From IMG/VR virus record IMGVR_UViG_3300025141_000016, positions 233,105 through 297,104 of that record: a stretch of DNA of 64,000 nt; one strand, written 5' to 3'. Numbering within the stretch: the stretch's first letter is position 1; each line of letters starts with the position of its first letter. The notes under the pieces were generated by a model. The model was not told the DNA's origin and made no database searches. It worked only from the letters and a program-made list of their open reading frames with translations. This document shows, piece after piece, positions 1 through 60,550 of this stretch. A program made the position numbers and the translations under genes.

Positions 1-2
1 TG

Positions 3-2144
3 ATTCCGGGGCGTTCTGACACATTACTGGAACTGATTGAGGGGGCGGGGTTCCAAGGACGCGCAGCACAGCGTTACGCCGACCGATTCCGTGAAACCCT
101 CGCTCAACAAAGCCGAGAGGTTGCCGCCAGCGCAAGTCGAGTCGCTGCCCGCTACCTCGTCGCAGACTGCAATCTGCGGCTTCCCTCTCATTCATGGATT
201 GACCCCAAGGGGAAGGTTCATTTGGTTCCCCTTATGCACGATGTCTGGGCCGAGGAAAAGATACGATCTACGCCCTCGATGCTGCGTTCGTTTGTGAAAC
301 GCTACAGGGAATACTATCCCGATGAACTCTATGAGATCGACCATCCGTGGACCAGTTTTCTGGTTGACCAAGGTTGGGTGAGGGTGGCGAACTTTCTGAA
401 CTTTGAGGGGAGAGATCACCTTGTTTCCCCGCACGCTTGGGAGTCAGCCGCAGACCTCATCATCAACTGTGTGGTCAAGAAGCAGCTTGACCCCGAGACT
501 ACTGTCGTGACGGTCGCTGGATATGGGAAGCAGCGATACTCGGTGTCCCAGATCGTCAGGGAATGGGGTGGGCGCAAGGCCGAGGATCGGTTGTTTGGGG
601 CACTCATGGCCCGCACCGCTGCCCGACTTTGGTATCACGGGACTGAAAAGCGTTTTGAAGAGTTCAAGACCTTTGAGAGCCACACGTTTGGGTCTGACCC
701 CTCCGAAGTGCCTCTGTTCTTCTCGCCCTCCAAGTCCTTTGCAAAGATGCACGCCCAAGGACCGAAGGGGGTCATCTACACGGCGCGGCTGAAGTGGCGC
801 AAGGTGTTTGATAGCGCCAACTTGTATCGGGAATCTCGGTACTGGCCCCCCGAACGTGACGCTCTGACCCAAGAGGGGAAGGCCCTGTACGACGACCTCG
901 TAGGGGGCAAGGTGTTTCCCGGCATTGATGAAGACGATCTGCTTGACGGGTATCCGAGTCTTTGGTCGCAGGTGCTCCGTATGGATTACGATGTGATTGA
1001 AACGACGGAGTTCAAGCGGTGGCTCAAAAAGAACGGTTACGACGCGGCTTATGTCACGGGAGATGGTGAGCAGAACGTGTTTGTCTTCTCCCCGAGACAG
1101 GTCGAGGTTGTGGGCGTGCAAAGGGCCTCCGCATCCGTTTCTGCTTCCCGTGTCGCTGCTCGCCATCCCGTCGTGGACATTGACCCCAGCAAAGTAAAGT
1201 TCAAGATCCGATCCAGTAGCGATGCTGTGGCTGTGGAAATGCGGTATGGCGGTAAGCGCATTGGCGGCATGAACGCCCACAAGGTCCGTTATCCAGAAGA
1301 GAAGGACTGCCCTCGGGACGTTACCGCGTTGGCTGAACGCTTCCCCGAGTTGGTGACGGGAGAATGGAAGCGCAGCGATGGTGAGGTGTGGCGATACATC
1401 ACCGCGCTGGCCGTCTTCAAAGCGTTCATCACCGAGGAGGAGTTTCGGGGGTATGGGCTCGGCAAGAAGATGTATAAGGCACTGATGGGGGCTTGGTTCA
1501 AGAAGGTCGGACCATTTCTTTTCATGCCCTATAAGTGTGACGGGGGTTCGGGCACGTCACCAGACGCGATGCGGGTTTGGCACTCTTTAGCCAAGGAGTT
1601 TCCATCAAGTGGCGACGTGGTTGCGGTGATGAAGAATCCGCGTGTGGCTCGGGGGCAGTTACCCCAGTACCGAAAGAGGGCACACACCCCCGACTCCAGC
1701 GAGGAGGTCGAGAACTGGGTGGATGACTTTGGGCGGGAAAACAACTACACGCCTGGAACCTGTGACCTCAACCGTGGCGACTGCGACATGATGTCAAACG
1801 TCTTCGCGGACTGGTTTGAGGACCAGACTGGCGTGGGGCTTCAGATATGGGCCGGTCAGGGGTTCATCCCTCCTCTCGGGAAGGATGCCAATGACCTCTG
1901 GGTCATGCTTTCGGGGGACAAAGCCCACAAGAAAGGCGAGAAACCCCTCTCCCATGTGGTCGTCGTCTGGGGGGATTGGGTCATTGACCTTACAGGTCGT
2001 CAGTTCGGTTCCAAGTACAAGGCCCCTGTGTACTCTCTTTCGGAGTTCAAGAAGCGGTGGGCCACCGTTGGGAAGGCCCGTCGGGCTGACCGAGGGATCA
2101 ACAACCTCCGACGGATGATGCTCCAGAACTCCAGCGATTGGTAG
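3..2144 (+). CDS. Tag-B polyprotein, 5'-truncated: unknown domain + ART-like + GNAT + transglutaminase/papain-like domain
   Basis: Frame of ORF 222..2144 is open back to the window start and includes ASASRVAARYL (129-158). ART-like: WYHGT..FFSPS..GYDA..VFSPRQV. GNAT: EFRGYGLGKKMY. C-H-D triad: GDCDMMS..SHVVV..IDLTGRQF. Confidence 0.75.
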   Translation: MPGRSDTLLELIEGAGFQGRAAQRYADRFRETLAQQSREVAASASRVAARYLVADCNLRLPSHSWIDPKGKVHLVPLMHDVWAEEKIRSTPSMLRSFVKRYREYYPDELYEIDHPWTSFLVDQGWVRVANFLNFEGRDHLVSPHAWESAADLIINCVVKKQLDPETTVVTVAGYGKQRYSVSQIVREWGGRKAEDRLFGALMARTAARLWYHGTEKRFEEFKTFESHTFGSDPSEVPLFFSPSKSFAKMHAQGPKGVIYTARLKWRKVFDSANLYRESRYWPPERDALTQEGKALYDDLVGGKVFPGIDEDDLLDGYPSLWSQVLRMDYDVIETTEFKRWLKKNGYDAAYVTGDGEQNVFVFSPRQVEVVGVQRASASVSASRVAARHPVVDIDPSKVKFKIRSSSDAVAVEMRYGGKRIGGMNAHKVRYPEEKDCPRDVTALAERFPELVTGEWKRSDGEVWRYITALAVFKAFITEEEFRGYGLGKKMYKALMGAWFKKVGPFLFMPYKCDGGSGTSPDAMRVWHSLAKEFPSSGDVVAVMKNPRVARGQLPQYRKRAHTPDSSEEVENWVDDFGRENNYTPGTCDLNRGDCDMMSNVFADWFEDQTGVGLQIWAGQGFIPPLGKDANDLWVMLSGDKAHKKGEKPLSHVVVVWGDWVIDLTGRQFGSKYKAPVYSLSEFKKRWATVGKARRADRGINNLRRMMLQNSSDW

Positions 2145-2366
2145 CTACCGTTTGAGGAAGGCGGCGGCGACACCCCATCCCTTCGACGTGAGCCGACGGG
2201 GCTCTTTCTTGGTGATCCAGCCCTTTGTCAGTGCATGGTGGTGGTAGGGGCAAGGCCCCGAAACCGGGATGGAACCCAGAGGGTTTTTCAAGCAGTGGTC
2301 GGCCCACTTGATCATCACCTTCCGAGTCATCTGGTTGATGAACGCCTCTTCGCCTTTCGATCTCAT
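2145..2366 (-). CDS. Small hypothetical protein
   Basis: ATG at 2366 preceded by AGGAG; stop abuts the stop of the convergent gene. Confidence 0.55.
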   Translation of the reverse strand: MRSKGEEAFINQMTRKVMIKWADHCLKNPLGSIPVSGPCPYHHHALTKGWITKKEPRRLTSKGWGVAAAFLKR

Positions 2367-2416
2367 AGGTATCTCCTGCCCCACTATACCGAGGGGGTGC
2401 GCTTCATCTGTACCCC

Positions 2417-2431
2417 CGGTACTCATGCTAT
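2417..2431 (+). promoter_or_regulatory. Class I (late-type) motif, variant
   Basis: CGGTAC-tcatg-CTAT, before ATG 2461. Confidence 0.6.
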
Positions 2432-2460
2432 GGGCACACGAGAATGAGAGAGCACCGCCT

Positions 2461-3474
2461 ATGTCCGAACTTCACCTGTATGACTTCGACGGAACACTGT
2501 TCCGAAGTCCCCATGAGCCTGCGGTGTGGGATGGTCAGTGGTGGAACGACGTGCGCTCCCTGATCCCCCCGTGTGTCCCACAGAAGCCGGGGGCTGATTG
2601 GTGGGTCAACCAAACTGTCAGCAGTGCCAAGCAGTCGATCTCCGACCCAGACGTGTTTGCCATGATGATCACAGGGAGGAATGCAAACTCGGGTCTTCGG
2701 TTCCGGGTGCCAGAACTCCTCAAACAGCGAGGGCTCAACTTCGATGAGGTCCATCTGACCCCCGTTAGCAGCACCCTGGGGTACAAGAAGAAGCTGCTGG
2801 GGAATACGTTGGGGCGGTATCCCCTCATCGACACCGTGCGGATGTGGGACGACAGACCCTCACACCTCCGAGCCTTCGCGCAGGTTGCGGAGAAGATGGG
2901 GATTGACCCCGAAAACATCCATGCCACCCAGGTCCGGGCCAAGTCCAAAGACCCCGAGTGCGAAGAAGACAGCCCAGCAGGGGGTGGTTTCCTGTCAGAC
3001 CCCCCTCCAATCGGAGACGTGTGCCGATATGTAGGGGTTTTTCTTGATGCTTCTTCCAAGGCAGCCCTGTCACATGCGTTCCCTTTTGCCCACAACAAGA
3101 TCAAGAACGACCATGTGACCCTCTGCCTTGGCCCCGCTCTTGGGGGAAACATAGCGGAGGGTGCCCTCGATCTCCTGGGAACGAAGGTACGCATGAAGGT
3201 GATTGGCTACGCCGAGGATGAGGATGGGCAAGCAGTAGTGGTTTCTGTTCCCCCCGGACTCATCTCGGACGCTTCCAGAATCCCTCATGTCACCTTGTCC
3301 ATCTCGGACTCGGTGCAGTCCAAGTACAGCAACACTCTCCTCCGCAAAGGGTGGGAGCGTGTTCGCGGCCCCGCCATCAGTGGGGTGATTGATATGTTTC
3401 CGCGCTCCATGCGAAGGCAAGCAAGTGCAGTTCGGGTAGCCTTCCTGCATTCTCGCTTGGGCCGTAGCGGGTAG
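2461..3474 (+). CDS. HAD-family (Swiss-army-knife type) phosphatase fused to 2H phosphoesterase; RNA end-healing enzyme; C-terminal tag B
   Basis: YDFDGTLF..ITGR..WDDR (HAD) and two HVTL motifs (2H). Start moved to ATG 2461, 30 nt after a class I motif. Confidence 0.8.
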   Translation: MSELHLYDFDGTLFRSPHEPAVWDGQWWNDVRSLIPPCVPQKPGADWWVNQTVSSAKQSISDPDVFAMMITGRNANSGLRFRVPELLKQRGLNFDEVHLTPVSSTLGYKKKLLGNTLGRYPLIDTVRMWDDRPSHLRAFAQVAEKMGIDPENIHATQVRAKSKDPECEEDSPAGGGFLSDPPPIGDVCRYVGVFLDASSKAALSHAFPFAHNKIKNDHVTLCLGPALGGNIAEGALDLLGTKVRMKVIGYAEDEDGQAVVVSVPPGLISDASRIPHVTLSISDSVQSKYSNTLLRKGWERVRGPAISGVIDMFPRSMRRQASAVRVAFLHSRLGRSG

Positions 3475-3483
3475 CCTCTCTAT
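3469..3483 (+). promoter_or_regulatory. Class I motif
   Basis: GGGTAG-cctct-CTAT, before 3513. Confidence 0.7.
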
Positions 3484-3512
3484 CAAGGCTCCCACCGTAG
3501 AGGTATTCGTTT

Positions 3513-4838
3513 ATGGCCCATGACGACGATGCAAAGAAAACCAGTGAGACTCCGTTTTCTCTGACGCAGAACCCCGCTCCGAACCCTGTGACGGGGTTGG
3601 CGTACAAGACCCAGAAACGGGATCTTGTAGAGAAGATCCTGGCGACGTTCCGGTCTGTGCTGCCGAGCAACTATGTCGCACAGGTCAATGGCCCCTGGTA
3701 CTCGTTGCAGTTTCAGGCGATGGCCGAGCAGTTGGCCGAGATCCAAATCTTGGGGACCGAGGTCTACAAAGACTCTGATTGGGACTTCACGCGCACAGAC
3801 TTCTTGTGGCAAGTGCTGGGGTCACTCGTTTTTCCAGGGGCGACTGACCGCTCGGGCATCCCGGCCATCGACGGGGACACCGCCTATCGGCAGTTCCTAC
3901 ATAAGATGGTGTTGTTTCTGTTGGACGGAGCCACCAAAGCCAGCCTGGAAAGAGGGTTAGAGGCCCTTGATCCCGATGTGGTGGCCACCATCACCGAGAG
4001 GTATCTGGAGTCCCCCCCTCGTGATGAAGATGGGGCCTTCACCATTGATGACCAGTTCGTCATCGACGTTTTCATCGAGGGGGCAGCACCCAACACCTTC
4101 CCTGCTGACCCCTTCGTTCTCCAGCAGAACGCGGAACTGGTGCTGGCAGCCTTGAAGCCAGCGCACGTCATCTATTCGTACTCCTACTTGTTCCGCGATG
4201 CCTTCGACAAGATCGCGGATGACAGTGGGGGCCTTTCCCTTGATCTCGACTCCTATTACTACGCCGACCTGCGGAAGTGGTGTCTGGGTGCCCAGCGCAT
4301 CACCGGATCCGGGGACACCCTCACCAACCGGATGCACTTTTCGGACCCCACCAAGTCCTTCCAGAACGTCCGGGCTGGGGCAATCCTCACCTTATCCGCT
4401 GGTGCTAACAAGGGTCGCTATCGGGTGGTGTCAAAGAGGGTTCTCCTGGGGGGCATCGACCCAACATCAGTGACCTACACCCTCTCCACGTCCCTTGTTC
4501 TCACAGGGACTCTGACCGCTCCTGGCGTGGATACGGTGACATTGAGCGCGGCCCCTGATTGGAGCCTCATCCCAGTGGACACCACCATCACCATTGGAAG
4601 TGGGATCAACGCTGGGACGTATCGCTTGGACACAGTGCTGGGGCCAACGGGAGGACCAGTGGGAACTGTTGGGATCAGTGGCGCACAGGTGCGCCTGTCC
4701 CCCAGCATCCTTCAGGTGGAACGCCGAATGTTGAGCACGTTGAATGCTCAAGCCTATGAGGTCGGTGTGGATCGACTCGGGGTACAACTCCCCCACGTTG
4801 TTGCTGGTGAGAACGTCTCCACCCAGTTCCTTTTGTGA
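3513..4838 (+). CDS. Probable baseplate wedge / tail-formation protein
   Basis: DTAYRQFL..GATKASLE..ALKPAHV pattern typical of baseplate protein I-like proteins; beta-rich C-terminus; class I promoter. Confidence 0.6.
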   Translation: MAHDDDAKKTSETPFSLTQNPAPNPVTGLAYKTQKRDLVEKILATFRSVLPSNYVAQVNGPWYSLQFQAMAEQLAEIQILGTEVYKDSDWDFTRTDFLWQVLGSLVFPGATDRSGIPAIDGDTAYRQFLHKMVLFLLDGATKASLERGLEALDPDVVATITERYLESPPRDEDGAFTIDDQFVIDVFIEGAAPNTFPADPFVLQQNAELVLAALKPAHVIYSYSYLFRDAFDKIADDSGGLSLDLDSYYYADLRKWCLGAQRITGSGDTLTNRMHFSDPTKSFQNVRAGAILTLSAGANKGRYRVVSKRVLLGGIDPTSVTYTLSTSLVLTGTLTAPGVDTVTLSAAPDWSLIPVDTTITIGSGINAGTYRLDTVLGPTGGPVGTVGISGAQVRLSPSILQVERRMLSTLNAQAYEVGVDRLGVQLPHVVAGENVSTQFLL

Positions 4839-4845
4839 GGCGGCG

Positions 4846-5667
4846 ATGACCCCTTCAAGCCAACGTGTAGCTTCCCGGTGGGCGAAGTCCCAAGCCAACT
4901 GGACGCTGCCCTATCTGGAAAAACTCATCAAGGCAGCCGAGGGTGACCCCACAGGGTGGGGGGAGAGTAGTCCTGCCGCCCGCGTCCTGCGGCAGATGAT
5001 CAAGTCCTCCGGGTTCGGGAACCTTGACCCGTTCCCAGTAGGTGAACTGTGGGACTACTTGACCTCATACGATGTGGACTCCGACGAGATCGCGGTGTTG
5101 AAGAAAGTTCGACCCCCCCGAGCACGGAAAAGGAAGGTAGGTCCGACATTCTACGAAGCACTACGCGCCTTTGAGCAGGCAACGGGGAAACACACGACCA
5201 CATCCCGCATTGACTGGGACAACGACCACCACTTGGCCCCGGCATTGTTGGCGATCACCAAAGCCGTCTCCAAGTTGCCCAAGCGGGCTGCCCGCCTCTG
5301 GCAGTCGGAAGTCAAGGAGGTGATGCTGGTCGGGCGCAACAAGAGCACCGAGGATGCCTCTTGGCGGGCCGGTGGCGTGATGCGTTTAGTGCTCGGAAAG
5401 AGTGGTTTCCACTCTGTGTCCCAAAGCGTTCCCCCCTGGCGCTCCCACATTGTCCATGAACTCGGGCACGCACTGGAGGACAAGTTGAATCTGGTGGTGA
5501 CCGCTTGGTCCTCGGACCCCTACGGCCATGAACCATACATTTCGGCATACGCGGACACGAACGCCTCGGAGGACTTTGCCGAGACGTTTCAGGCTTTGGA
5601 GATGGAGCCGAGCCGCCTACGACGAGTAGCCCCTGCCAAGTATGAGGACATGAAGGCTCGCTTTTGA
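4846..5667 (+). CDS. Tag-B protein with zincin metallopeptidase domain
   Basis: HELGH followed by SAYADTNASEDFAE; N-terminal SSQRVASRW; start moved to ATG 4846. Confidence 0.75.
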   Translation: MTPSSQRVASRWAKSQANWTLPYLEKLIKAAEGDPTGWGESSPAARVLRQMIKSSGFGNLDPFPVGELWDYLTSYDVDSDEIAVLKKVRPPRARKRKVGPTFYEALRAFEQATGKHTTTSRIDWDNDHHLAPALLAITKAVSKLPKRAARLWQSEVKEVMLVGRNKSTEDASWRAGGVMRLVLGKSGFHSVSQSVPPWRSHIVHELGHALEDKLNLVVTAWSSDPYGHEPYISAYADTNASEDFAETFQALEMEPSRLRRVAPAKYEDMKARF

Positions 5668-5673
5668 GGGGTG

Positions 5674-5688
5674 CGGTAAGTCCTCTAT
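5674..5688 (+). promoter_or_regulatory. Class I motif
   Basis: CGGTAA-gtcct-CTAT, before 5720. Confidence 0.75.
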
Positions 5689-5719
5689 TGATTGGTGTGG
5701 CGTAGAGGAGACTTCTCGT

Positions 5720-6097
5720 ATGTCTGACCAACCCAGTACCCGGCGAGTGGCCCGTGCGTTCCAAGCGGCACGAAACACCCGCCGCCTCAAAGAAGCCCTG
5801 GAGGCATACCTCCACTCCATCCAAATCGAATCCGAGCAGATGATGGATGACCCCAAGTGGGGGAAGGGGGGCAAGTATGACCCCGTAGCGGATGCCGGTG
5901 TTTGGATCGGGGACCGGGCCAAGGACGAAGCGGGGGCCGATGTGGTGCTCCACTTTGATGGGGCTGGGTATGACTATTTCTACTACGGGTCACGCATGGC
6001 TGAACCTCACCGCAAGGCGGTGAGGGCCATCGCCAAGAAGCTGGGCTACGAGATGGAAGACAACACCAACTGGAACATCGGCTTCTACCCGAGATAA
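5720..6097 (+). CDS. Tag-B hypothetical protein
   Basis: N-terminal STRRVARAF; RBS and class I motif upstream. Confidence 0.7.
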   Translation: MSDQPSTRRVARAFQAARNTRRLKEALEAYLHSIQIESEQMMDDPKWGKGGKYDPVADAGVWIGDRAKDEAGADVVLHFDGAGYDYFYYGSRMAEPHRKAVRAIAKKLGYEMEDNTNWNIGFYPR

Positions 6098-6600: not shown

Positions 6601-8631
6601 TTAGGGGGTGCTGGCGTGGGCATCGAAGTCAATCTCGCAGGAACCCCCCATGCAAGCAAGGGTCTGTGCGCCCTGGCCCATGTCCTCTGTCTCGTAGCGG
6701 GAGAGGAGTCCGTAATCGACGGTGGGAAAGTCCTCACTCAACCGTAGGTATTCTTCCTCGGTGATCTTCGTGTAGGGGGCGAGTTCGTAGTTGCCCCCAT
6801 CGTAGGGGAGAAACGAGAGGCCGGTCACTTCATCGAAGTGCGTGTAGAGCCAGTTCCCTACCTCGTCCCACTCATGGTCACGAACGTAGACGGTGGCACT
6901 CTGGTTGTGGCCGCGCCGAGAGCACCACGTCTGCATGATGTGAAGGTAGCGTCCAAGCTGTTCCAAAGCAGTCTCATCGTCGCGGGTCATGCACCCCTTG
7001 GGGGCCTTCACGGGGAACTCGACCACCCATGTAGGACATTCATCATCAGGTCCGTCCTTGTATTTCACGTCCTTGTGGACAGGAGCACCCGAGTCGCGAA
7101 TGAGGTGGAAGAGAGGATCGGTGGCACTGACCCGCACGCGACGGATGTAGAACGGTGACCACCGTGTGTGGAACCCGCTCGCACAATCCACAGCCTGTGA
7201 ACTGTTGCCACTCGGCTTCCCACAGGCCACCGAAGCGGGCATCGGAATGTTGAGGTGAGCCGAGGCTGCGGCAGCAGTTTCCAGGGCCACGCGGTTGAAG
7301 TAGGTCATGGCCTTGGGGTCATTGGACAGGGTGGGGTTGTCACAGTGCCCGGTAATGTCCACTCCCAGGAGCCGGTCCTCATCACAGTGCTTCTTCCAAG
7401 CCGGACGGAGGTACGGGAAGTGGGTGAAGGACGCTTGAATCGCGCCGATCCAAGTAGCCACCTTGACCTTTTCAGCGAAGGAATGAACAGTGTCGTCGGC
7501 TCGCATGACAGCAGCCGAGAGATTGCAGAACTGGCCTCCACCCCCTTCGCCGGTCCAGGGGTCTTCCGCTACCGCGTAGCGGAGTAGGATCTCCCCACAC
7601 GGGTTGGAGCGCATGTCTCCACGGCGTTCTCGACGCTTGGCGCTCGGGATCATGTAAAACCCACGCTCACCGCTGCCGCTGTTCCGTAGGGCGGCCCACT
7701 CTGCATCGAAGGTCTGACGGTCAGGCTTATCGCTCCAGAATGCAGACAGGTTCGCCATGTATCGGTGCTCGGGAAACTTGCCTCGGCTCCAGTCTTTCGC
7801 GTGGCGCATCTCCTCGTCGTCAGGGTCAGAGAAGCAGATGAGAGCAGCACGACGCACACCCCCTGCCTTGACGATCTCTCCGATCATGCAGCAAATGTCG
7901 CTGACCTCCAACGAGGTCAGGTGTCGGCCCGAGGCCCCGTCGATGACCTCCTGGCAGAACTCCAAGAGAAGACGTAGAGGTTTTGGCCCGGAAGCCCTGC
8001 CCCCTTTCGTCATGCACCGTGAACCTTCAAGTCGGATCAGGGAGTAGTCGAACTCGACCGTATAGCCCTTCCACATGGAGGTGAGTCCGTGGAACACCGC
8101 GTCGGCCCAACCCTCCGTTGAGTCTGGGATCAGGTACGAGACTGTCTTCCCGTTACGGGGGGCAACCAACGGTAGATTGCTGACGAACTTCCGTTCGACG
8201 GAGTAGCCAACGCCAGTGCCCATCATCAAGATGTAGAGCATCTCCGCGAAGGCCCGCAGGTTGTCCATCGGCAGGAAGGAGCAGTTGTAGATCATCGTGT
8301 TGTCGCGCTCTGCCGCAGGACCAGCCGACCACAATGCCCGCATCGACGGCAGCGTCCCCATCTCCAGCATCCCCTCACGCACTGACTTCAACACCGCTGA
8401 TGGAATGTCCCGATTCCGGTCGATGAAATCCACATATCGGTCCACCGCTTCGGGGTAGACCTCACGCCGAGAGTCCTCTTCCCGCCATCGCAGGTAGGAG
8501 CGTGTGATCACGAACTGGGAGAGGGGGTTGGCGAAGGAGAAGGTAGGTTTGAGGTCCGCATGGAAAACCGTCCCCGGAAGCGTCTGTAGGCCATCTGTAT
8601 TGTGTGCGGCGGGGGGGCGTGGTTGGTCCAT
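6601..8631 (-). CDS. nrdJ: Class II (adenosylcobalamin-dependent) ribonucleotide reductase
   Basis: PSMR..YNC, GGVRRAA, NPCGEI, FCNL, KPSG motifs; C-terminal CxxxxC pair. Confidence 0.92.
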   Translation of the reverse strand: MDQPRPPAAHNTDGLQTLPGTVFHADLKPTFSFANPLSQFVITRSYLRWREEDSRREVYPEAVDRYVDFIDRNRDIPSAVLKSVREGMLEMGTLPSMRALWSAGPAAERDNTMIYNCSFLPMDNLRAFAEMLYILMMGTGVGYSVERKFVSNLPLVAPRNGKTVSYLIPDSTEGWADAVFHGLTSMWKGYTVEFDYSLIRLEGSRCMTKGGRASGPKPLRLLLEFCQEVIDGASGRHLTSLEVSDICCMIGEIVKAGGVRRAALICFSDPDDEEMRHAKDWSRGKFPEHRYMANLSAFWSDKPDRQTFDAEWAALRNSGSGERGFYMIPSAKRRERRGDMRSNPCGEILLRYAVAEDPWTGEGGGGQFCNLSAAVMRADDTVHSFAEKVKVATWIGAIQASFTHFPYLRPAWKKHCDEDRLLGVDITGHCDNPTLSNDPKAMTYFNRVALETAAAASAHLNIPMPASVACGKPSGNSSQAVDCASGFHTRWSPFYIRRVRVSATDPLFHLIRDSGAPVHKDVKYKDGPDDECPTWVVEFPVKAPKGCMTRDDETALEQLGRYLHIMQTWCSRRGHNQSATVYVRDHEWDEVGNWLYTHFDEVTGLSFLPYDGGNYELAPYTKITEEEYLRLSEDFPTVDYGLLSRYETEDMGQGAQTLACMGGSCEIDFDAHASTP

Positions 8632-11719: not shown

Positions 11720-12031
11720 GTGTACCGATTATGGATTGTGGACCGGGATCTGAAACCGACCGTGCTGAGTGCGGCTTACCTGACCGTCCATGAGGCGATG
11801 GGGTCGGCAGCGCGTTTGATGAAGGGGTTTGGTGCCCCGGCGTTGGATGCCAGGAACATTCTGATGTGGGCAGGGAAGCCCAGCCTTGTGGTCTTTGACC
11901 CCACCTTTTCGGTCGTTGTGTCGGCGGTCATCGAGGGAGGTCAACTGGTGTCGAGTGGTGACGATCCTGTCCCCCTTGATCCTGACGACAACGTGGGTCC
12001 ATGCCAGACGACCCCTTCAATCTCCGAGTAG
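11720..12031 (+). CDS. Hypothetical protein
   Basis: GTG start with GGAGG RBS. Confidence 0.5.
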   Translation: MYRLWIVDRDLKPTVLSAAYLTVHEAMGSAARLMKGFGAPALDARNILMWAGKPSLVVFDPTFSVVVSAVIEGGQLVSSGDDPVPLDPDDNVGPCQTTPSISE

Positions 12032-12046
12032 CGGTAGGAGCCCTAT
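12032..12046 (+). promoter_or_regulatory. Class I motif
   Basis: CGGTAG-gagcc-CTAT, before 12075. Confidence 0.75.
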
Positions 12047-12074
12047 AGGTTCCGAGGGGTCAGGAGCCCTCATC

Positions 12075-13097
12075 GTGAATCACCCGGACCCCAAACGAGT
12101 TGCTATCGCTGTGTCTCCGCAGCATCAGGCGGCTCGGGTAGCGGCTCGCTACGCCTCCTCCCCTCTGATAAAGGAGTTGGAGGAAGACTACCATTCCCTC
12201 TGGCATGACAAGCATGAAAGGGAGGACGGAAAGCCTCGGCTGTGCCCACTGAAAGCTGGGGTGCCCGATTGTGAGAAGATGACCCTCAAAGAGTTCGTTG
12301 CCAAGTGGAAGAGGCACGGGCTGAAGGCGGTAAAGGTCCAACGGCTTCCTACCACCTACTCCTACTATGACTGTGGGAGCCACGCCACGCTGCGGACGGA
12401 ACAGATCCATGGCAGCCGACTTTACCCCCAAGGCGACATCACGGTTGACTTGAACACCCCCATTCCTTGGAGCAAGGCGAAGAAAGGCGACTGGGTTCAA
12501 TGGCCATGGCACCACGGAGTGGTGATTGATCCCAAGCGCAAGATTGTGGAGAGTTGTTGGGGGGTAGACGGATGGGTGTTTCAACACCCCGTAGACCTTT
12601 CTACTTATGGGGCGAAGCCTACGGTTCATTCCGTGCATCCAAAAGAGAAGACCAAGACCGCCAGTTCTGATGGTCAGTGTATCGTCGGAGGCCAGTGCTT
12701 CCGCTACGCTGTCATGTGGGATGGCAAAGGCCCAGGATCATCCCCTGACGACATTGTTGTTCACGGGAACGTGCATGGCTTGGTCGGTCCTCACGCCTGG
12801 GTCGAGCGGAAGGACGGTCGCGTATTTGACTGGCAGACGGTTGAGGGGATCTGGGAGACGCTTGGCCGTCAACCTGACCCCAGCTACACCAAGCGCGGCT
12901 GGCCGAAGCGTGAGTTCTACGCGGAGTTCAAGCCGCGCAAGATGAAGCGGTACACCGCCGAAGACGCGCTGATCAACGGGATACGGAACCGGCACTACGG
13001 TCCCTGGGACGCGGATGAGGAGTACCGTCCTCCAATCCGATCAGCATCGCGGGTTGCCGCTCGCTACTTGATGGCTTCTCGGCGGCAACGCCGGTAG
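12075..13097 (+). CDS. Tag-B polyprotein: NlpC/P60-papain-like domain + transglutaminase-like domain
   Basis: YDC..HHGVV..ESCWG..HP..YG domain; KTAS linker; QCFRYA..HAWVE..FDWQ domain; tag B at both ends. Start GTG 12075 after AGGAG. Confidence 0.7.
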   Translation: MNHPDPKRVAIAVSPQHQAARVAARYASSPLIKELEEDYHSLWHDKHEREDGKPRLCPLKAGVPDCEKMTLKEFVAKWKRHGLKAVKVQRLPTTYSYYDCGSHATLRTEQIHGSRLYPQGDITVDLNTPIPWSKAKKGDWVQWPWHHGVVIDPKRKIVESCWGVDGWVFQHPVDLSTYGAKPTVHSVHPKEKTKTASSDGQCIVGGQCFRYAVMWDGKGPGSSPDDIVVHGNVHGLVGPHAWVERKDGRVFDWQTVEGIWETLGRQPDPSYTKRGWPKREFYAEFKPRKMKRYTAEDALINGIRNRHYGPWDADEEYRPPIRSASRVAARYLMASRRQRR

Positions 13098-19496: not shown

Positions 19497-19976
19497 ATGT
19501 CTTCCCCCATCCTGATCTTGGAAGGGATTTTCGTCCCGGCAACGTCCTCCGGGGACTCCCTGGTCGTGTCACGGCTTGGGGATCCCGATGCGGATCTCGA
19601 TGAGATCCTTTCTGAGTACGTCGGCAGTGCCGTGGAGGTAAGTCTTCACCACTACCCTGAATCTGTGGACAAGACGCAGCCGGGAGGGGGCTCGTGTCTG
19701 TGGGGTGGCTTTTGCCCGCACGGGCACCGTGAGAACCCAGGGTGGTTGTTCCACCAGAGGCTCACCGGAGAACTGTCCCAGGAGAGTTCGGGGTGGTCCG
19801 TGGGTGGCACGGCGCTTGGGTTCTCCAAGATGCCGGGGCATCGGGGTCGGCTCGTCATCATGGACGTGCAAGCCCTTGAGAGTCCGGCCCCCGATGCTTC
19901 TCCAGACGACCTTATCTGTGAGGCAGGCGACCTTGCGGATCTGCTCACCGAACTTCAGAAGGTGGTGAAACCATGA
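19497..19976 (+). CDS. Hypothetical protein
   Basis: ORF coupled (ATGA) to recD2; class II motif upstream. Confidence 0.65.
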   Translation: MSSPILILEGIFVPATSSGDSLVVSRLGDPDADLDEILSEYVGSAVEVSLHHYPESVDKTQPGGGSCLWGGFCPHGHRENPGWLFHQRLTGELSQESSGWSVGGTALGFSKMPGHRGRLVIMDVQALESPAPDASPDDLICEAGDLADLLTELQKVVKP

Positions 19977-22228
19977 GTGAACAGACATATAGTGGTCGGG
20001 TTTCCTCGGTCATGTTCCAGCGTGAAGATTTCCGCATCGCCAAAATCCTCCTCGATGATGACAACCCCCTCCCGGTAACGGTTGCAGGACACTTCCCCGC
20101 CCAGGCTGTGGACGTGGGGTCATGGGTGTCCTTCGCAGGGAAGTGGGTGAGACACCCCCAGTATGGCAAGCAGTTGAAGGTGACGCGGAGCCCAATCTCC
20201 GTCAACTGGACCGAGGACCGGGTTCTGTCGGCGCTTGCGGCTAACGATGTTGGCCCTCGTCTCCGGCGCAACCTGCTTGATCTCGCCGCAGAAAAAGGAA
20301 CGGAACTCGCAGACCTGTTGGACGGAGGATCCCTCGATGGCCTTGCGGGGTCCGACGAGATCACTCGCCTGTACGTCATCCAACGGTGGCGGGCTTTGCG
20401 TACACAGTTGGATGCAGCCAAGTTTCTCTCGGAGGCTGGGGTTCCCGCACGGGTAATCGGCAAGGTGTGGGGAGCCCTCGGGGATGAACTGGAGGAGAAG
20501 ATCACCGAAGACCCCTGGATTCTGGTCCGTGTAGGGGGGATTTCCTTCAAGGAAGCGGATGAGGTAGCGATGAAGCTGGGGGTTTCCCTCGACAACCCCG
20601 GACGAATCAATGGCGCGGTCCTGACGGCGGTTCAAGAGGTGGCTTCCGACGGGCATGTCTATGCTTCCACGGGGCAGGTCGTGAGAGCGGTTTCACGCTT
20701 GATCCCTGGCCCTGATGTGTCCCCTGAAAAGGTAGCCTCCGCGATTGGAACCCTTGTCACCCACAAGCAGTTGGTTGTGGAGCGTGGGTTTCGCGGTGGG
20801 TTGGTGGCTCTCTACGAGCCCTGGTCGGCCTCCATGGAAAAGGGGTGTGCCGACTTGCTCCACGTTCGACAGACCGAAGCGGTGATGGGCCTTGACCCAG
20901 ATGAAGCGAAGACGGAACTGGAGAAGTGGGCCATCGGCCACAAGGTCACCCTCACCCCTACCCAGATGGATGCCGCTCTCCGCGTGTTGACGGAACCGAT
21001 CTCGGTGCTCACCGGGCTTCCGGGGACCGGGAAGACCACCACCCTACAAGCGGCGGTGGCAATCTTGCGGGAGATGGCGGTCCCCTTTCTCTTGGTGGCT
21101 CCTACGGGGATCGCTGCCAAGCGTTTGTCCACCGTCACCGGAACCAAGGCTGCGACGGTTCATCGGGCTTTCTCGGCCAAGGGGTTTGAGACTCGGGAAC
21201 GTGAAGCTACCTATGTGGGGGTGGTGGGAGACACCGCTGCCAAGGGCAGCACGAATACGAAGGGGGAGGATTGGGGCTATGGCCCGGAGAACCCCCATCC
21301 CGCGCAGGTGGTGATCGTGGATGAGTCCTCGATGCTCGACCTCCACATGCTCTACCGGGTGTTGGGCGGGACGCTGGAAACGTGTCGTCTCGTCTTTGTG
21401 GGTGACCCCTACCAGTTGCCGTCGGTGGGAGCCGGAGATGTTTTGCGTGATCTCGTGTCTTCGGGACGCTTCCCCCACACCCACCTCACCCAGATTTTCC
21501 GTCAGGAAGACACTTCCAGCATCATCACCGCAGCCCACGCTGTTCATGCAGGGAAAACCCCAGACATGGAAGACAGAGATTTCTTGCTAATCCCCGCTGA
21601 TACCGAGGATGAGGCAGCGTTCACCATTCGCGGTATCGCCCAACGCCTCTACGCCAAGCGGGCAAACTTCCAAGTGCTCTCCCCCAGGCATAAGGGTGGT
21701 GCTGGGGTCACGGCTCTGAATGAGTTGCTGCGGATGGCGCTCAACCCCCCTACCCCTGGACTTGCCGAGCGCAGGATCATGGGGGATGTGATTCGGGAAG
21801 GGGACCGCATCATGGTCGTCAGGAACGACTATGAGCATGGGGTGTTCAACGGGGACATAGGGAAGATTAGCCGCATCGACCACCGAGCCAAAGAGTTGGA
21901 GATCAAGGTGTTTGGTGGGGAGATGGACAGGATGGTGCGCTACAACGTGGCGAAGCACACACCTCCGATTCGGTTGGCATACTGTCAGACCATCCACAAG
22001 TCGCAGGGGCAGGAGTACGACGTGATCGTCGTTCCTATGTTCCCGTCATTCGGAAGGCAGCTTCAACGGAACCTGCTCTACACCGCAATCACCCGAGCGA
22101 AGAAGCGGGTGTTCATCGTTGGGTCTGCCGCTGCCGTGAGTAAGGCAGTCGCCAATGATAGGGCTGACCGGCGTAATACTCTCCTGGCTGATCGTATCGG
22201 GGCTCTCTGTGGTGCTTCCGAGGAGTGA
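19973..22228 (+). CDS. recD2: RecD2-type SF1B helicase
   Basis: N-terminal OB fold (HPQYGKQ), HhH, GLPGTGKTT, APTGIAA, VDESSM, GDPYQLPSVG, TIHKSQG, YTAITRA. Confidence 0.95.
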   Translation: MSEQTYSGRVSSVMFQREDFRIAKILLDDDNPLPVTVAGHFPAQAVDVGSWVSFAGKWVRHPQYGKQLKVTRSPISVNWTEDRVLSALAANDVGPRLRRNLLDLAAEKGTELADLLDGGSLDGLAGSDEITRLYVIQRWRALRTQLDAAKFLSEAGVPARVIGKVWGALGDELEEKITEDPWILVRVGGISFKEADEVAMKLGVSLDNPGRINGAVLTAVQEVASDGHVYASTGQVVRAVSRLIPGPDVSPEKVASAIGTLVTHKQLVVERGFRGGLVALYEPWSASMEKGCADLLHVRQTEAVMGLDPDEAKTELEKWAIGHKVTLTPTQMDAALRVLTEPISVLTGLPGTGKTTTLQAAVAILREMAVPFLLVAPTGIAAKRLSTVTGTKAATVHRAFSAKGFETREREATYVGVVGDTAAKGSTNTKGEDWGYGPENPHPAQVVIVDESSMLDLHMLYRVLGGTLETCRLVFVGDPYQLPSVGAGDVLRDLVSSGRFPHTHLTQIFRQEDTSSIITAAHAVHAGKTPDMEDRDFLLIPADTEDEAAFTIRGIAQRLYAKRANFQVLSPRHKGGAGVTALNELLRMALNPPTPGLAERRIMGDVIREGDRIMVVRNDYEHGVFNGDIGKISRIDHRAKELEIKVFGGEMDRMVRYNVAKHTPPIRLAYCQTIHKSQGQEYDVIVVPMFPSFGRQLQRNLLYTAITRAKKRVFIVGSAAAVSKAVANDRADRRNTLLADRIGALCGASEE

Positions 22229-22230
22229 GG

Positions 22231-22257
22231 GGGGTTCCCTCTGTTCCTGGGTGGGTA
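22231..22257 (+). promoter_or_regulatory. Class II motif
   Basis: GGGGT-N17-GGGTA, before 22277. Confidence 0.7.
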
Positions 22258-22276
22258 TGAGCGGGGGGAGGTTCCT

Positions 22277-22684
22277 ATGGACCGAAAGACACTCGACAGA
22301 ATCCGAGTGGCCGTCAAGGAGACACGGAGTCGGCTCCGAGTCACCAAGGTCGTGGCTACTCGGGCGGTCAAGACCTCTCGCGGCGAGTTCTTCTGTGGCA
22401 TGTCCGCAGCCTGGGACTCCGTTCAGACCGATGCGGCTGGAGCAACCGACCTTGATCTTGTCCTGGGGACCGCCGAGGAGGCAGCCTCGGGCATGACCAT
22501 CGAGGAAGCGCGGGTTTCGTACCTCCTCCTTTCACTGGAAGCCAGTATCGGAGCGTGGCGGGCCGCTTTGAGTGAGGGGGCGATCACTCCCGAGCAGTTT
22601 GAGGCGAGGGTGCGTGACCTCAAACGCAACACTGTGGCCCATCTGGAGCGCATCTTGCCCCCCGAAACCGATCCCGAGGAATAG
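22277..22684 (+). CDS. Hypothetical protein
   Basis: ORF with RBS and class II motif. Confidence 0.7.
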   Translation: MDRKTLDRIRVAVKETRSRLRVTKVVATRAVKTSRGEFFCGMSAAWDSVQTDAAGATDLDLVLGTAEEAASGMTIEEARVSYLLLSLEASIGAWRAALSEGAITPEQFEARVRDLKRNTVAHLERILPPETDPEE

Positions 22685-22692: not shown

Positions 22693-23577
22693 ATGTCGGA
22701 GACTGCACCCGAGTTGCCCCAGGTCAATGCCGAAGCCATTGATGCCGTTTTCGCTACGTTGACGCGCATGGAGGTCGAACTGGACGACGACCCGCTCCAG
22801 TTTGGACCCAAGCGTCTTCAAGGAAAGGTAGCCCAGACGCGGCGGATGCTCACCGAGTGTGAGGGTCTGTTCCTACGGGTCAGCCATTGGCTCCAGAAAT
22901 ACCGGGCTGCACACCGCACCTTGGACGTGGAACTGGACTTGGAGAAGAAAGACCTCTTTGCCAATGATCCCGAGGTCAGGGCTGGTCGGAATGTGGCAGA
23001 CCGGGAAGCCCTGGCGACGATGAAGTTGCGGGAGAAAGCCCAAGCCCTCGCCAAAGTTGCCCAGTCCCAAGCGGATTTGGAGGCGATGCTCATTGTCATC
23101 AAGGCCAAGCGTAGTGATCTCAAAGACGTTCAAGGTCGCATCAGGGACCAGATGAAGCTGTGCAACGAGGAGATCGGCCTCGGAGGATTCTGGGGGAGCA
23201 AGCCTGCCCCTGGGTCGCAGGCTCCTGACCTTGAAGCCTCGCCCGACGTGGACCGCAAGACCTTGCGTGATCTCCATGAGATGTTCACCGGGACAGGGGT
23301 GGAAGAACCGGACCTTGCCGCTGTCGCACCGCTCATTGACCCCGAGCCCGAGCCCGAGCCCGAGCCGGAGAGTTCCACGGGGGACACCCCTGCCGAGAGC
23401 GTGGGTGATCTCCTTGCTGATCCCGAGACGGAGGAAGACCCCTTTACGGTAGAGTCCCTTGGTCCTACAGGCTCGGACGAGGAGTCCGACGAGTTCCTGT
23501 CGGCCATCGGCGGGGAAGATGAGGTGGCCTTGAAGCCCCGTTCAATCGAATCTTTGCTCGATGACCTCGACATTTAG
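22693..23577 (+). CDS. Coiled-coil protein with acidic tail (possible recombination mediator)
   Basis: Helical N-terminal half, (PE)5 repeat, acidic end; precedes ssb-ruvC-recA. Confidence 0.55.
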   Translation: MSETAPELPQVNAEAIDAVFATLTRMEVELDDDPLQFGPKRLQGKVAQTRRMLTECEGLFLRVSHWLQKYRAAHRTLDVELDLEKKDLFANDPEVRAGRNVADREALATMKLREKAQALAKVAQSQADLEAMLIVIKAKRSDLKDVQGRIRDQMKLCNEEIGLGGFWGSKPAPGSQAPDLEASPDVDRKTLRDLHEMFTGTGVEEPDLAAVAPLIDPEPEPEPEPESSTGDTPAESVGDLLADPETEEDPFTVESLGPTGSDEESDEFLSAIGGEDEVALKPRSIESLLDDLDI

Positions 23578-23586
23578 TGGGGAGGG

Positions 23587-23612
23587 GGGGTGTTTCCTAT
23601 CCCCGTCGGGTA
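23587..23612 (+). promoter_or_regulatory. Class II motif
   Basis: GGGGT-N16-GGGTA, before ssb. Confidence 0.65.
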
Positions 23613-23689
23613 AGACCTCTTGGCGCACAACACCAAACACCGCCGAAACGGCATTGAAATGAACGCGCCTTCACACACTGGAGACTGAC

Positions 23690-24409
23690 ATGACAGACGG
23701 ATTTATGGACTTCACCGTTGGGTCTGGCGATGAGAACATCGGCCAGACCAGCAAGCGATTCAAGGGAGAGACGGGGCGCACCTATCGCGTTTCCTTCCCC
23801 TGGCTCACCGGACTCGATGGCGACGGGCATCCTACGGATGATTCCGCCCCTCGCTTCACTGGCTGTGAGCGGATCTACAAGCAGGGGTTGGGCTACGTCC
23901 TGATCACTGATAGCAACCGCAGTGCGGTGCTCAACTACCTTGGTGCGACCCCCAAGCAGGCGATTGCCACGGTGGTCGTCGTTTGGCCGACCAACAAGGA
24001 CGGCGAACTCGACGTGGAGTCGTTCAAGGCTGGCAAGGGCTGGTCGGTGCAGCCGTGGGTCTTTGATCCCGGCAAGTACCGCGAGATTGGTCGTAGCCAC
24101 AAGCGGTTCCCTCTCGGGAAGCACGACCTCTCGATGGCTTGCTCTGATGGGCAGTTCCAGAAGATGAGTTTCACCCCCGAGGGTGACAACCTGCTTCGCA
24201 AGCTGCTTGGGGCCAAGTCCGAGGCACTTCGGGAGGTGGGGGCACAGATCCTCCAGAAAGCCGAGCGTGTGGCCGAGGGCATCCGTCGTGATCTCGCTCG
24301 GGAACTCACCCTGGATGAGATGCGCGAAAAGCTGGGCGACGAGGTTGCCAGCCCGACTGGTAACCACTCCGCGAAGAACGTGGACGACCTGCTCGATGAC
24401 GTGATTTGA
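23690..24409 (+). CDS. Probable single-stranded DNA-binding protein (gp32-like)
   Basis: Size, aromatic-rich core, acidic C-terminus (VDDLLDDVI), context. Confidence 0.6.
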   Translation: MTDGFMDFTVGSGDENIGQTSKRFKGETGRTYRVSFPWLTGLDGDGHPTDDSAPRFTGCERIYKQGLGYVLITDSNRSAVLNYLGATPKQAIATVVVVWPTNKDGELDVESFKAGKGWSVQPWVFDPGKYREIGRSHKRFPLGKHDLSMACSDGQFQKMSFTPEGDNLLRKLLGAKSEALREVGAQILQKAERVAEGIRRDLARELTLDEMREKLGDEVASPTGNHSAKNVDDLLDDVI

Positions 24410-29763: not shown

Positions 29764-29766
29764 GGG

Positions 29767-29793
29767 GGGGTCAGCGACCCCTCTGGTCGGGTA
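29767..29793 (+). promoter_or_regulatory. Class II motif
   Basis: GGGGT-N17-GGGTA, before 29816 and dnaN. Confidence 0.7.
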
Positions 29794-29815
29794 CAGACCC
29801 CAACAGGAGAGTTCT

Positions 29816-30088
29816 ATGAGTAGTGGACTGGATACCCGGCTGAAGACTGCCGTGGCCTTGCGTGACCGTCTGTCTGCGGAGTCGCAGAGAATCGCTGGAC
29901 GGAAGGAGGCCGCCGAAAAGGCTCTTGCTGATGTGGAAAAGGAGATCCGAGGAAAGAAACTCGACCCGGACACCCTCGACCAGACCCTTGATACGCTCAA
30001 CGCTGCATACGAGCAGGCAGTCGAATCGTTTGAGCAAGCCCTCGATGCTGCTCGTGAAGCCCTCGCCCCCTACATGGAGAACCCCTGA
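29816..30088 (+). CDS. Small coiled-coil protein
   Basis: ATG 29816 with AGGAG RBS and class II motif. Confidence 0.7.
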   Translation: MSSGLDTRLKTAVALRDRLSAESQRIAGRKEAAEKALADVEKEIRGKKLDPDTLDQTLDTLNAAYEQAVESFEQALDAAREALAPYMENP

Positions 30089-36367: not shown

Positions 36368-36724
36368 ATGTGGGGACTGGATATGATCCGCCATATCAAT
36401 GAGGAAGCCGCTACCAAGGCTCGTGGGGAGGGGGCTGTCCCTTATCGGATGGACTCTCCTGACGAACTGGGGGAGTGGCCTCCCTTCCCGTTCCCGCACA
36501 TCGGCTATGCCTGCGAGGAGGTTGATGAGACGCATGAGCGTCTGGACACCCTCTTTGTGGACTCATCGGGCTTTGGTGGGGAGGAGGAGCCAGCGTTGAC
36601 CCTGCGTGCTTTCAAGGCTCGACTGGTGGCCCTTCATAGGGAGCACGGTTCCCTCTTCCTCGCCATCGAGGAGGTAGGCCAGTTCCAAGTCTATGTCGCT
36701 ATCTGGAAGGCTGATGGCGCTTGA
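36368..36724 (+). CDS. Hypothetical protein
   Basis: ORF with GGAG RBS. Confidence 0.6.
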   Translation: MWGLDMIRHINEEAATKARGEGAVPYRMDSPDELGEWPPFPFPHIGYACEEVDETHERLDTLFVDSSGFGGEEEPALTLRAFKARLVALHREHGSLFLAIEEVGQFQVYVAIWKADGA

Positions 36725-60509: not shown

Positions 60510-60550
60510 GTCTATTCTCCTCCCCAATGGGGTTTGGTTATGGTTGATAA

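What the first reader, a model, noticed from the sequence alone, without database searches (positions are those of the whole stretch)
3..2144. Polyvalent polyprotein (ART + GNAT + transglutaminase-like) extends beyond the ORF-track start
The frame is open from position 3 and holds an extra tag B at 129-158 that the ORF track missed. At least four modules follow, delimited by tag B or RTAA/RVAR/KRAH linkers. Three different modifying chemistries are strung together in one gene.
Basis: partly seen in the sequence, partly recalled or inferred. Interest (0 to 1): 0.6.

Follow-up and report, generated by a model that had tools for sequence, protein, structure and literature searches.

The report
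Tagged multi-enzyme effector of a huge phage
The open frame is the back half of a 1,247-residue phage protein that strings about seven enzyme-like modules together, joined by a short peptide tag that recurs about 36 times in some 21 proteins of this marine giant phage and probably marks proteins to be loaded into the head and cut apart.

Summary
Window 3-2144 (+) is open from the window edge. It holds the last 713 codons of a 1,247-codon gene (G000:C1:231505-235248) in a 297-kb marine virus record that is about 67% complete.

The full protein reads N-module, X1, ART1, X2, ART2, GNAT-like, then a Cys-His-Asp transglutaminase/papain-fold module.
- ART2 passes Pfam's cut-off for ART-PolyVal.
- The GNAT call rests on three weak but concordant lines.
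- X folds at pLDDT 92 and has no known fold match.

"Tag B" is real. Its consensus is P-x-[AP]-S-[AP]-[SA]-R-V-A-[AS]-R-[YF]. It is conserved as a peptide, because its codons vary. The strict form occurs 11 times against 0.05 expected, and a position matrix (PSSM) built from the tags finds 36 strong hits in 21 proteins. Tags sit at homology breakpoints between modules, at N-termini (9 proteins) and at C-termini (3 proteins). Tagged genes flank a head module with a maturation protease, a scaffold-like protein and the major head protein.

Best reading: a polyvalent effector (a known kind, Iyer 2017) in a variant that carries a portable loading/processing tag analogous to the T4 capsid-targeting sequence. 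The tag's function is inferred, not shown.

The parts
3..2144 (+). C-terminal 713 codons plus stop of a 1,247-codon polyvalent-protein gene. The gene starts upstream of the window at G000:C1:231505 (= L003:16201). The upstream 534 aa hold the N-module (aa 1-148), X1 (149-300) and ART1 (301-578).
3..128 (+). End of the helical tail of module ART1 (aa 535-576).
   Evidence: Alignment A6 with 6 homologues.
129..158 (+). Junction tag ('tag B'), SASRVAARYL, aa 577-586.
   Evidence: PSSM score 31.8.
156..626 (+). Module X2 (aa 586-742), second copy of a repeated domain of unknown function. Invariant residues are C590, S596, W599, G604, H613, G658, W659 and G723; C690 is conserved in at least 90% of the sequences.
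603..629 (+). Degenerate tag LMARTAARL. It lies inside the confidently predicted C-terminal helix of X2.
627..1136 (+). Module ART2 (aa 743-912), an ADP-ribosyltransferase of the ART-PolyVal family. It begins LWYHGT.
   Evidence: Pfam PF18760 above the gathering score. Six homologues at 65-79% identity.
1140..1166 (+). Junction tag SASRVAARH (aa 914-922).
   Evidence: PSSM score 26.8.
1164..1640 (+). GNAT-like module (aa 922-1080) with the motif-A-like R-G-Y-G-L-G-K at aa 1016-1022.
1641..1694 (+). Linker with tag-like remnants (RVARG, KRAH). A contig of a natural variant in a hydrothermal-vent metagenome diverges here, at window 1652.
1653..2141 (+). C-terminal Cys-His-Asp module (aa 1085-1247) of transglutaminase/papain fold. 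Catalytic codons: C1128 = 1782-1784, H1185 = 1953-1955, D1196 = 1986-1988. Q1201 and W1220 are also invariant.
2190..2204 (+). Terminator-like hairpin followed by a T-run, just after the gene.
   Evidence: a consensus match only

Best explanation
Shown: the frame is part of one 1,247-aa 'polyvalent' effector gene of an uncultured marine huge phage. The gene lies in an operon-like run: UvrD-like helicase, a 288-aa protein, this gene, then a terminator-like hairpin. The protein is a chain of separately evolving modules: an N-module (possibly ART-like), X1, ART1, X2, ART2, a GNAT-like module, and a Cys-His-Asp transglutaminase/papain-fold module. A 10-12-residue peptide tag with consensus P-x-[AP]-S-[AP]-[SA]-R-V-A-[AS]-R-[YF]-[AL] sits at the module borders.

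Inferred: the modules are host-modifying enzymes. They would perform ADP-ribosylation with NAD+, acyl transfer from acyl-CoA, and thiol-dependent deamidation, transamidation or proteolysis. They would act together early in infection, like T4 Alt and the polyvalent proteins of Iyer et al. 2017.

Also inferred: the tag is a portable signal shared by about 21 otherwise unrelated proteins of this phage. Its most likely role is to direct them into the assembling head and/or to mark where a phage protease cuts, so that the chain is released as single modules. This is analogous to the capsid-targeting sequence, the only feature that T4's diverse internal proteins share.
For: Architecture:
- ORF and extension.
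- Each module has its own set of homologues in other, differently assembled proteins that cover only 8-24% of the query, and the alignments end at the tags.
- ART2 passes Pfam's cut-off.
- ART1 shares the YHGT...F-x-[ST]-P...A core with ART2 (Pfam E 0.011, hhalign E 0.019).
- GNAT-like.

Tag:
- It is conserved as a peptide, with synonymous codon variation.
- Strict form 11 against 0.046 expected. DNA pattern 11/0 with control 0. 36 strong PSSM hits in 21 proteins.
- The same junction peptide occurs in relatives from other metagenomes (17 seed-pattern matches in the 21 fetched relatives; sequences) and in a complete 436-kb relative.
- Nine proteins carry it at residues 7-18 and three within 20 residues of the C-terminus.
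- Tagged proteins are effector-like: ART-PolyVal, C39-like peptidase, poly(A)-polymerase-type nucleotidyltransferase, HExxH modules, and weak ParB-like, SWIM and DUF4258 matches.

Head link:
- A head maturation protease (phrog_18299, E 1e-12), an acidic repeat scaffold-like protein and the major head protein (phrog_2522, E 9e-55) lie at 19.5-24.2 kb. Tagged genes lie on both sides, at 9-15 kb and 28.7-34 kb.

Precedents:
- T4 internal proteins share only a capsid-targeting sequence (PMC3012670).
- A giant-phage prohead protease cuts ejection proteins at repeated motifs (PMC10052503).
- Polyvalent proteins are predicted to be packaged and processed (PMC5512222).
Against: - No experiment or proteome exists, so packaging and cleavage are untested.
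- The gene sits among replication and repair genes (helicase, PNK-like, RNR), not among head genes. This would fit early cytoplasmic expression as well.
- The protease, scaffold-like and major head proteins carry no strong tag. In T4 and phiKZ-like phages the same protease motif is also found in the head's structural proteins.
- One tag-like stretch (RTAARL) lies inside a confidently predicted helix of X2. The conserved positions (R0, V1, R4, Y5) fall on one helical face. This fits a docking helix better than an extended protease site.
- The GNAT call is below all curated thresholds.
- ART1 and the N-module are leads only.
- The MPTase-PolyVal, S77 and S78 protease and Terminase_6N models found nothing in this incomplete record.
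Confidence: 0.6

Rival explanations
1. Cytoplasmic polyprotein. The tags are only cleavage sites, cut after synthesis in the infected cell by one of the phage's own tagged peptidase modules (HExxH zincins, C39-like, or the Cys-His-Asp module itself), with no packaging into the head.
For: - Iyer et al. propose zincin-mediated processing of polyvalent proteins.
- HExxH modules are the commonest module in tagged proteins here and in relatives.
- The gene lies among early-type replication genes.
Against: - Tags 7-9 residues from the N-terminus of most of nine proteins, or followed by only a few residues at the C-terminus, would release nothing useful.
- Pfam's MPTase-PolyVal model does not match this genome.
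- The co-fold of the C-terminal module with a tag peptide gave no answer.
- The nearest structural relatives of that module are deamidases, not peptidases.
Confidence: 0.17
2. Docking motif without cleavage. The tag is a short helical linear motif that binds one common partner and concentrates many different enzymes on it. The partner could be a host hub such as RNA polymerase or the ribosome, or a phage chaperone or portal.
For: - The conserved positions R0, V1, R4, Y5 with small residues between form one face of a helix, preceded by an S/P-rich cap.
- The RTAARL copy is modelled as helix at pLDDT of about 90.
- The motif works at N-terminal, internal and C-terminal positions and in several copies per protein, as linear motifs do.
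Against: - No partner is identified.
- The motif's exact coincidence with module borders in shuffled relatives is not required for docking.
- The helical reading rests on one degenerate copy.
Confidence: 0.15
3. Recombination scar. The tag is a neutral linker left where modules were joined, kept because short shared sequence promotes module shuffling, and has no function as a peptide.
For: - Modules are clearly shuffled among relatives.
- A vent-metagenome variant breaks off at the GNAT-like/TG junction.
Against: - Codons of the tag vary freely while the peptide is kept, so selection acts on the peptide and there is no DNA microhomology.
- The tag also stands at the N-terminus of single-module proteins.
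Confidence: 0.06
4. Artefact. The long frame is a chimeric assembly or a decayed gene.
For: None beyond its unusual length and modularity.
Against: - The frame is uninterrupted for 1,247 codons.
- A second IMG/VR contig of 150 kb matches the three modules searched (aa 1-150, 925-1080 and 1085-1247) at 100% identity.
- Error-free pieces occur in three other marine runs.
- Every module has conserved homologues.
Confidence: 0.02

Closest known systems
Polyvalent proteins of phages and conjugative elements (Iyer, Burroughs, Anand, de Souza, Aravind 2017, PMC5512222)
   Same: Many unrelated effector domains lie in one polypeptide of a tailed phage. The ART-PolyVal domain is the signature enzyme, and a GNAT next to the ART is a described theme. 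Modules are shuffled between relatives. Packaging and proteolytic processing are predicted.
   Different: That paper does not use the words 'linker', 'transglutaminase' or 'papain'. A conserved junction or terminal tag is therefore not among its themes as far as those word searches show. Pfam's MPTase-PolyVal model finds nothing here. Domain X, the N-module and the Cys-His-Asp module have no Pfam family match for this protein.
T4 capsid-targeting sequence on internal proteins and Alt (PMC3012670; Mullaney and Black 1996, cited in PMC10052503)
   Same: A short conserved peptide is the only feature shared by diverse anti-host proteins, including an ADP-ribosyltransferase. It is N-terminal in many carriers, and a head maturation protease is encoded nearby.
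   Different: The sequence is unrelated. Here the tag also occurs internally, up to 5 times per protein, and at C-termini. It is absent from the scaffold-like and major head proteins. Neither cleavage nor loading has been shown.
Prohead-protease processing of ejection proteins in giant phages (phiKZ gp175, SPN3US gp245; PMC10052503)
   Same: Giant phages, many head-internal ejected proteins, and repeated short motifs within one substrate.
   Different: Those motifs are 3-residue patterns ending in Glu that are also found in portal and capsid proteins. Here the tag is a 10-12-residue Arg/Ala/Tyr motif restricted to effector-like proteins.
Protein-glutaminase / SseI / PMT-C3 deamidases and LapG-type transglutaminase-like cysteine proteinases

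Membership tests
Polyvalent proteins (Iyer et al. 2017) | Two or more unrelated effector or enzymatic domains in one polypeptide. | tested here: met
   ART-PolyVal, a Cys-His-Asp papain-fold module, a GNAT-like module and two X copies.
Polyvalent proteins (Iyer et al. 2017) | Encoded by a phage or conjugative element. | tested here: met
   A virus record with a major head protein, a head maturation protease and a sheath-like protein.
Polyvalent proteins (Iyer et al. 2017) | Delivered with the DNA (packaged in the head). | not testable with these tools
   Only context is available: tagged paralogous genes flank the head module, but this gene itself lies among replication genes.
Polyvalent proteins (Iyer et al. 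2017) | Zincin-like MPTase-PolyVal domain for processing (common, not obligatory). | tested here: not met
   PF18818 has no match in the record at E<=0.1. HExxH modules of other types occur in tagged proteins g28, g113 and g175.
ART-PolyVal (PF18760) | Score above Pfam's gathering threshold. | tested here: met
   ART2: 46.3 bits for the protein and 36.1 for the stretch, against 31.2. ART1 alone scores 16.9 bits, E 0.011, below the cut-off.
ART-PolyVal (PF18760) | H (strand 1), Y (strand 2), D (strand 5) active site (PMC5512222). | tested here: inconclusive
   The His of the invariant Y-H-G-T is present in both ART modules.
GNAT acetyltransferases | Pfam family score above threshold. | tested here: not met
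   Acetyltransf_7 13.7 bits against 27, and Acetyltransf_1 12.6 against 20.7.
GNAT acetyltransferases | Motif A, R/Q-x-x-G-x-G/A (the CoA pyrophosphate loop). | tested here: met
   R1016-G-Y-G1019-L-G1021-K. The glycines and the lysine are invariant in 9 homologues. The same stretch aligns to PDB GNAT 4h89 at E 0.06.
GNAT acetyltransferases | GNAT fold. | not tested
Only language-model neighbours support it (viral GNAT clusters, 0.94).
Transglutaminase-like / papain-fold Cys-His-Asp enzymes | Invariant Cys, His and Asp in that order. | tested here: met
   C1128, H1185 and D1196 are invariant in 37 sequences.
Transglutaminase-like / papain-fold Cys-His-Asp enzymes | Cys at the N-terminus of a helix, with His and Asp on or next to adjacent beta-strands. 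| tested here: met
   The model has Cys44 at the start of helix 43-59, His101 in strand 97-106 and Asp112 just after strand 109-111. 3-D distances could not be checked because coordinates are not exposed.
Transglutaminase-like / papain-fold Cys-His-Asp enzymes | Significant structural or sequence match to family members. | tested here: inconclusive
T4-type capsid-targeting / prohead-protease signal | Short conserved peptide shared by otherwise unrelated proteins. | tested here: met
T4-type capsid-targeting / prohead-protease signal | Directs cargo into the prohead and is cut by the head protease. | not testable with these tools
   A head maturation protease gene exists. There is no proteome and no cultured phage.

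The most novel reading that the evidence does not exclude
The tag is a portable head-loading and cleavage signal that defines, from sequence alone, the whole injected arsenal of a clade of marine huge phages. That arsenal would be about 21 proteins and more than 40 modules, including the uncharacterised X domain, a rare deamidase-like Cys-His-Asp family and a possible third ART type. Polyvalent proteins would then be true polyproteins, cut into single-module enzymes inside the head or on entry.
Probability: 0.35. Interest if true: 0.75.

Novelty: new variant of a known kind. Interest (0 to 1): 0.6.

Why it matters
Polyvalent proteins are a predicted but almost untested way for phages to deliver many host-modifying enzymes at once. 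How they are loaded and released is an open question. Here a single short peptide marks the borders and ends of such modules across some 21 proteins. That gives a concrete, testable handle:
- fuse the tag to a reporter;
- co-express it with the head protease, the scaffold-like protein or the peptidase modules;
- look for cleavage or recruitment.

If the tag works as proposed, the ejected effector set of uncultured huge phages could be read from genomes. The tag might also serve to load foreign proteins into capsids, as the T4 signal does.

The work also delimits three unnamed domain families (X, the N-module and the Cys-His-Asp module) for biochemical study.

Tried and rejected
- Megablast of window 1-6000 against GenBank phages: no match.
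- The search for related loci with single modules (TG, GNAT-like): returned only the same phage on a second contig. With the X alignment it found no stretch conserved enough to search with.
- A combined N+X1 alignment (A5) was misaligned by MAFFT and was not used for folding.
- hhalign of the GNAT-like profile against two Pfam-annotated GNAT modules, and of the N-module against both ART profiles: uninformative because the profiles are shallow.
- Profile searches of the TG, X and N modules against PDB sequences: nothing.
- Pfam models MPTase-PolyVal, Peptidase_S77, Peptidase_S78 and Terminase_6N: no match in this incomplete record.
- Complex prediction of the TG module with the tag peptide aa 563-602: no answer (score 0.02, controls not run). 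This is neither for nor against binding.
- Literature search for the tag strings: no paper.

Full report
**Observation.** The + frame that starts at window position 3 is open to the stop at 2142-2144. The window is the last 64 kb of a 297,104-bp IMG/VR virus record that CheckV rates 67% complete. In the upstream DNA the frame continues to an ATG at G000:C1:231505, giving a 1,247-aa protein, P0002. That ATG lies 4 nt after the stop of a 288-aa gene, which itself follows a 1,193-aa UvrD-like helicase. A terminator-like hairpin follows the gene at window 2190-2204. The 'TTG 222' ORF start is therefore an artefact of the window edge.

**Modules.** BLAST of seven segments against all fetched relatives and the phage's own proteome shows that each segment has its own set of homologues. 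These homologues sit in proteins with otherwise different architectures. Relatives cover only 8-24% of P0002, and their alignments stop at the tags.
- **N (aa 1-148):** invariant residues include H28, Y50, E99 and E100 in 8 sequences. There is no Pfam or PDB sequence match. The nearest named language-model neighbours are DarT/PARP and Arr ADP-ribosyltransferases, which is a weak lead only. The module also occurs in IMG/VR contigs of 223, 436 and 619 kb.
- **X1 (149-300) and X2 (586-742):** 32% identical to each other, E 7e-22. The same domain occurs up to six times in one relative.
- **ART1 (301-578):** a Y-H-G-T core plus a long helical tail. It matches ART-PolyVal only weakly (E 0.011; hhalign to ART2 E 0.019).
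- **ART2 (743-912):** passes Pfam's threshold for ART-PolyVal.
- **GNAT-like (922-1080):** see below.
- **Cys-His-Asp module (1085-1247):** see below.

**GNAT-like module.** Three independent weak signals fall on the same stretch. Pfam Acetyltransf_7 and Acetyltransf_1 score E 0.085 and 0.17. A profile of nine homologues hits PDB GNAT 4h89 at E 0.06. The language-model neighbours are viral GNAT clusters at 0.94. The motif R-G-Y-G-L-G-K fits GNAT motif A, and its glycines and lysine are invariant. The call is probable, not proven.

**Domain X.** AlphaFold2 on 14 copies gave pLDDT 92.1. No library gave a convincing match:
- Foldseek PDB, none;
- ESM Atlas, TM<=0.50 to unnamed, mostly viral clusters;
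- BFVD, only uncharacterised phage proteins, including one from the jumbo phage Atu_ph07.

X is an uncharacterised, repeat-prone domain with invariant C590, S596, W599, G604, H613, G658, W659 and G723; C690 is conserved in at least 90% of the copies.

**The tag.**
- *Pattern and frequency.* RV[AT]AR[YHF] occurs 11 times in the phage's predicted proteins against 0.046 in shuffles. A looser pattern occurs 25 times against 2.1.
- *Peptide-level selection.* The codons differ from copy to copy, so the peptide is what is conserved.
- *Logo.* The consensus extends to P-x-[AP]-S-[AP]-[SA]-R-V-A-[AS]-R-[YF]-[AL].
- *PSSM scan.* There are 36 hits of 14 bits or more in 21 proteins, against 0.1 expected. 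The matrix was trained on 26 of them.
- *DNA pattern.* The degenerate pattern gives 11 forward, 0 reverse and 0 for the backwards control. It also gives 5 in a complete 436-kb relative.
- *Relatives.* The same junction peptide stands between modules in relatives from other metagenomes.
- *Position.* In P0002 the tags at aa 295, 580 and 917 and the degenerate ones at about 147, 738 and 1081 coincide with the homology breakpoints. Nine proteins carry the tag at residues 7-18 and three within 20 residues of the C-terminus.
- *Carriers.* Tagged proteins are effector-like: ART-PolyVal (g176), a C39-like peptidase (window 54150-55403), a poly(A)-polymerase-type nucleotidyltransferase (g10), HExxH modules, and weak ParB-like, SWIM and DUF4258 matches.
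- *Literature.* No paper in the library holds the tag strings. The polyvalent-protein paper never uses the word 'linker'.

**Context for a mechanism.** PHROG scans place a head maturation protease at 19,549-21,045 and the major head protein at 23,342-24,226. An acidic, repeat-rich protein between them, at 21,055-22,431, looks scaffold-like from its sequence. Tagged genes lie on either side, at 9-15 kb and 28.7-34 kb. T4's diverse internal proteins share only a capsid-targeting sequence (PMC3012670). Giant-phage prohead proteases cut ejection proteins at repeated motifs (PMC10052503). I therefore favour a loading and/or processing signal.

Several observations count against this reading:
- P0002 itself lies among replication and repair genes.
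- The protease, scaffold-like and major head proteins lack the tag.
- The one tag-like stretch I could model is helical, and the conserved positions lie on one helical face. This fits a docking helix.
- A co-fold of the Cys-His-Asp module with a tag peptide gave no answer.

**Reality of the gene.** A second 150-kb IMG/VR contig matches the three modules I searched (aa 1-150, 925-1080 and 1085-1247) at 100% identity. Error-free low-depth pieces occur in three further marine runs. A hydrothermal-vent relative has a contig that matches up to window 1652, the junction between the GNAT-like and C-terminal modules, and then diverges.

**Comparison and novelty.** This is a polyvalent protein in the sense of Iyer et al. 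2017, and ART next to GNAT is one of their described themes. Four things are new relative to what I could read:
- the genome-wide junction and terminal tag;
- the Cys-His-Asp module in this setting;
- the X domain;
- the N-module.

I rate it a new variant of a known kind. Confidence is about 0.9 for the architecture and about 0.4-0.5 for the tag acting as a loading/processing signal.

**Limits.**
- Only two fold jobs were available.
- Gene calls outside the window are my own longest-ORF calls.
- The record is incomplete, so absent families may lie in the missing third.

Noticed in passing
L003:15330-16196 (gene just upstream of P0002; outside the window): In another phage, the 288-aa unknown protein P0004 has a homologue fused directly to the Cys-His-Asp module (P0027, 408 aa). 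This suggests the two work together.
   Followed up: partly
window 2269-3474 (+): A polynucleotide-kinase-like protein (phrog_415) lies next to the polyvalent gene. It ends in a weak tag-like ASAVRVAFLH (PSSM 10.1).
   Followed up: partly
window 11886-13097 (+) and 58265-59671 (+): Two proteins share a Cys/His-containing module (DCGSH ... HHGVVIDP ... ESCWG) flanked by tags on both sides. The module has no Pfam or PHROG match and also occurs in relative P0017.
   Followed up: partly
window 54150-55403 (+): A protein with an N-terminal Peptidase_C39_2 domain (E 2e-8) and a strong tag at aa 272. It is a candidate tag-processing enzyme that I did not test.
   Followed up: partly
window 47117-52606 (+): A 1,829-aa protein whose last 350 residues or so match a tail sheath family (phrog_2839, E 2e-24). 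The first 1,470 residues or so are unexplained.
   Followed up: no
G000:C1:19549-24226 (L025): Head module: maturation protease, an acidic protein with (EEASDEE...KGKKARALRAKALRMLRLAD) repeats that looks like a scaffold, a 212-aa protein, and a 294-aa major head protein without a delta domain. The protease tail has a tag-like TRVASSP.
   Followed up: partly
G000:C1:190585-196478 (L014): A 1,519-aa protein with five tags, two HExxH modules, a GNAT-like module and ParB-like ends. Its stop overlaps the start (ATGA) of a 445-aa ART-PolyVal protein that begins with the tag.
   Followed up: partly
G000:C1:28403-28702 (L006): An ORF made of (Val-Ser)n repeats lies directly upstream of the tagged gene at 28689-30617. 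It may be a simple DNA repeat rather than a gene.
   Followed up: no
window 60000-64000: GC falls from about 0.59 to 0.50-0.53 and the long ORFs switch to the minus strand at the end of the record.
   Followed up: no
window 1524-1652: A hydrothermal-vent metagenome contig matches here (8 differences in 129 nt) and then continues for 203 nt of unlike sequence. The break is exactly at the junction between the GNAT-like and C-terminal modules, so it is a natural module swap.
   Followed up: partly
window 6601-8631 (-), 19973-22228 (+), 36693-38126 (+): Ribonucleotide reductase, a RecD/Dda-like helicase and a clamp loader. The polyvalent gene sits in a replication and nucleotide-metabolism region.
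   Followed up: no
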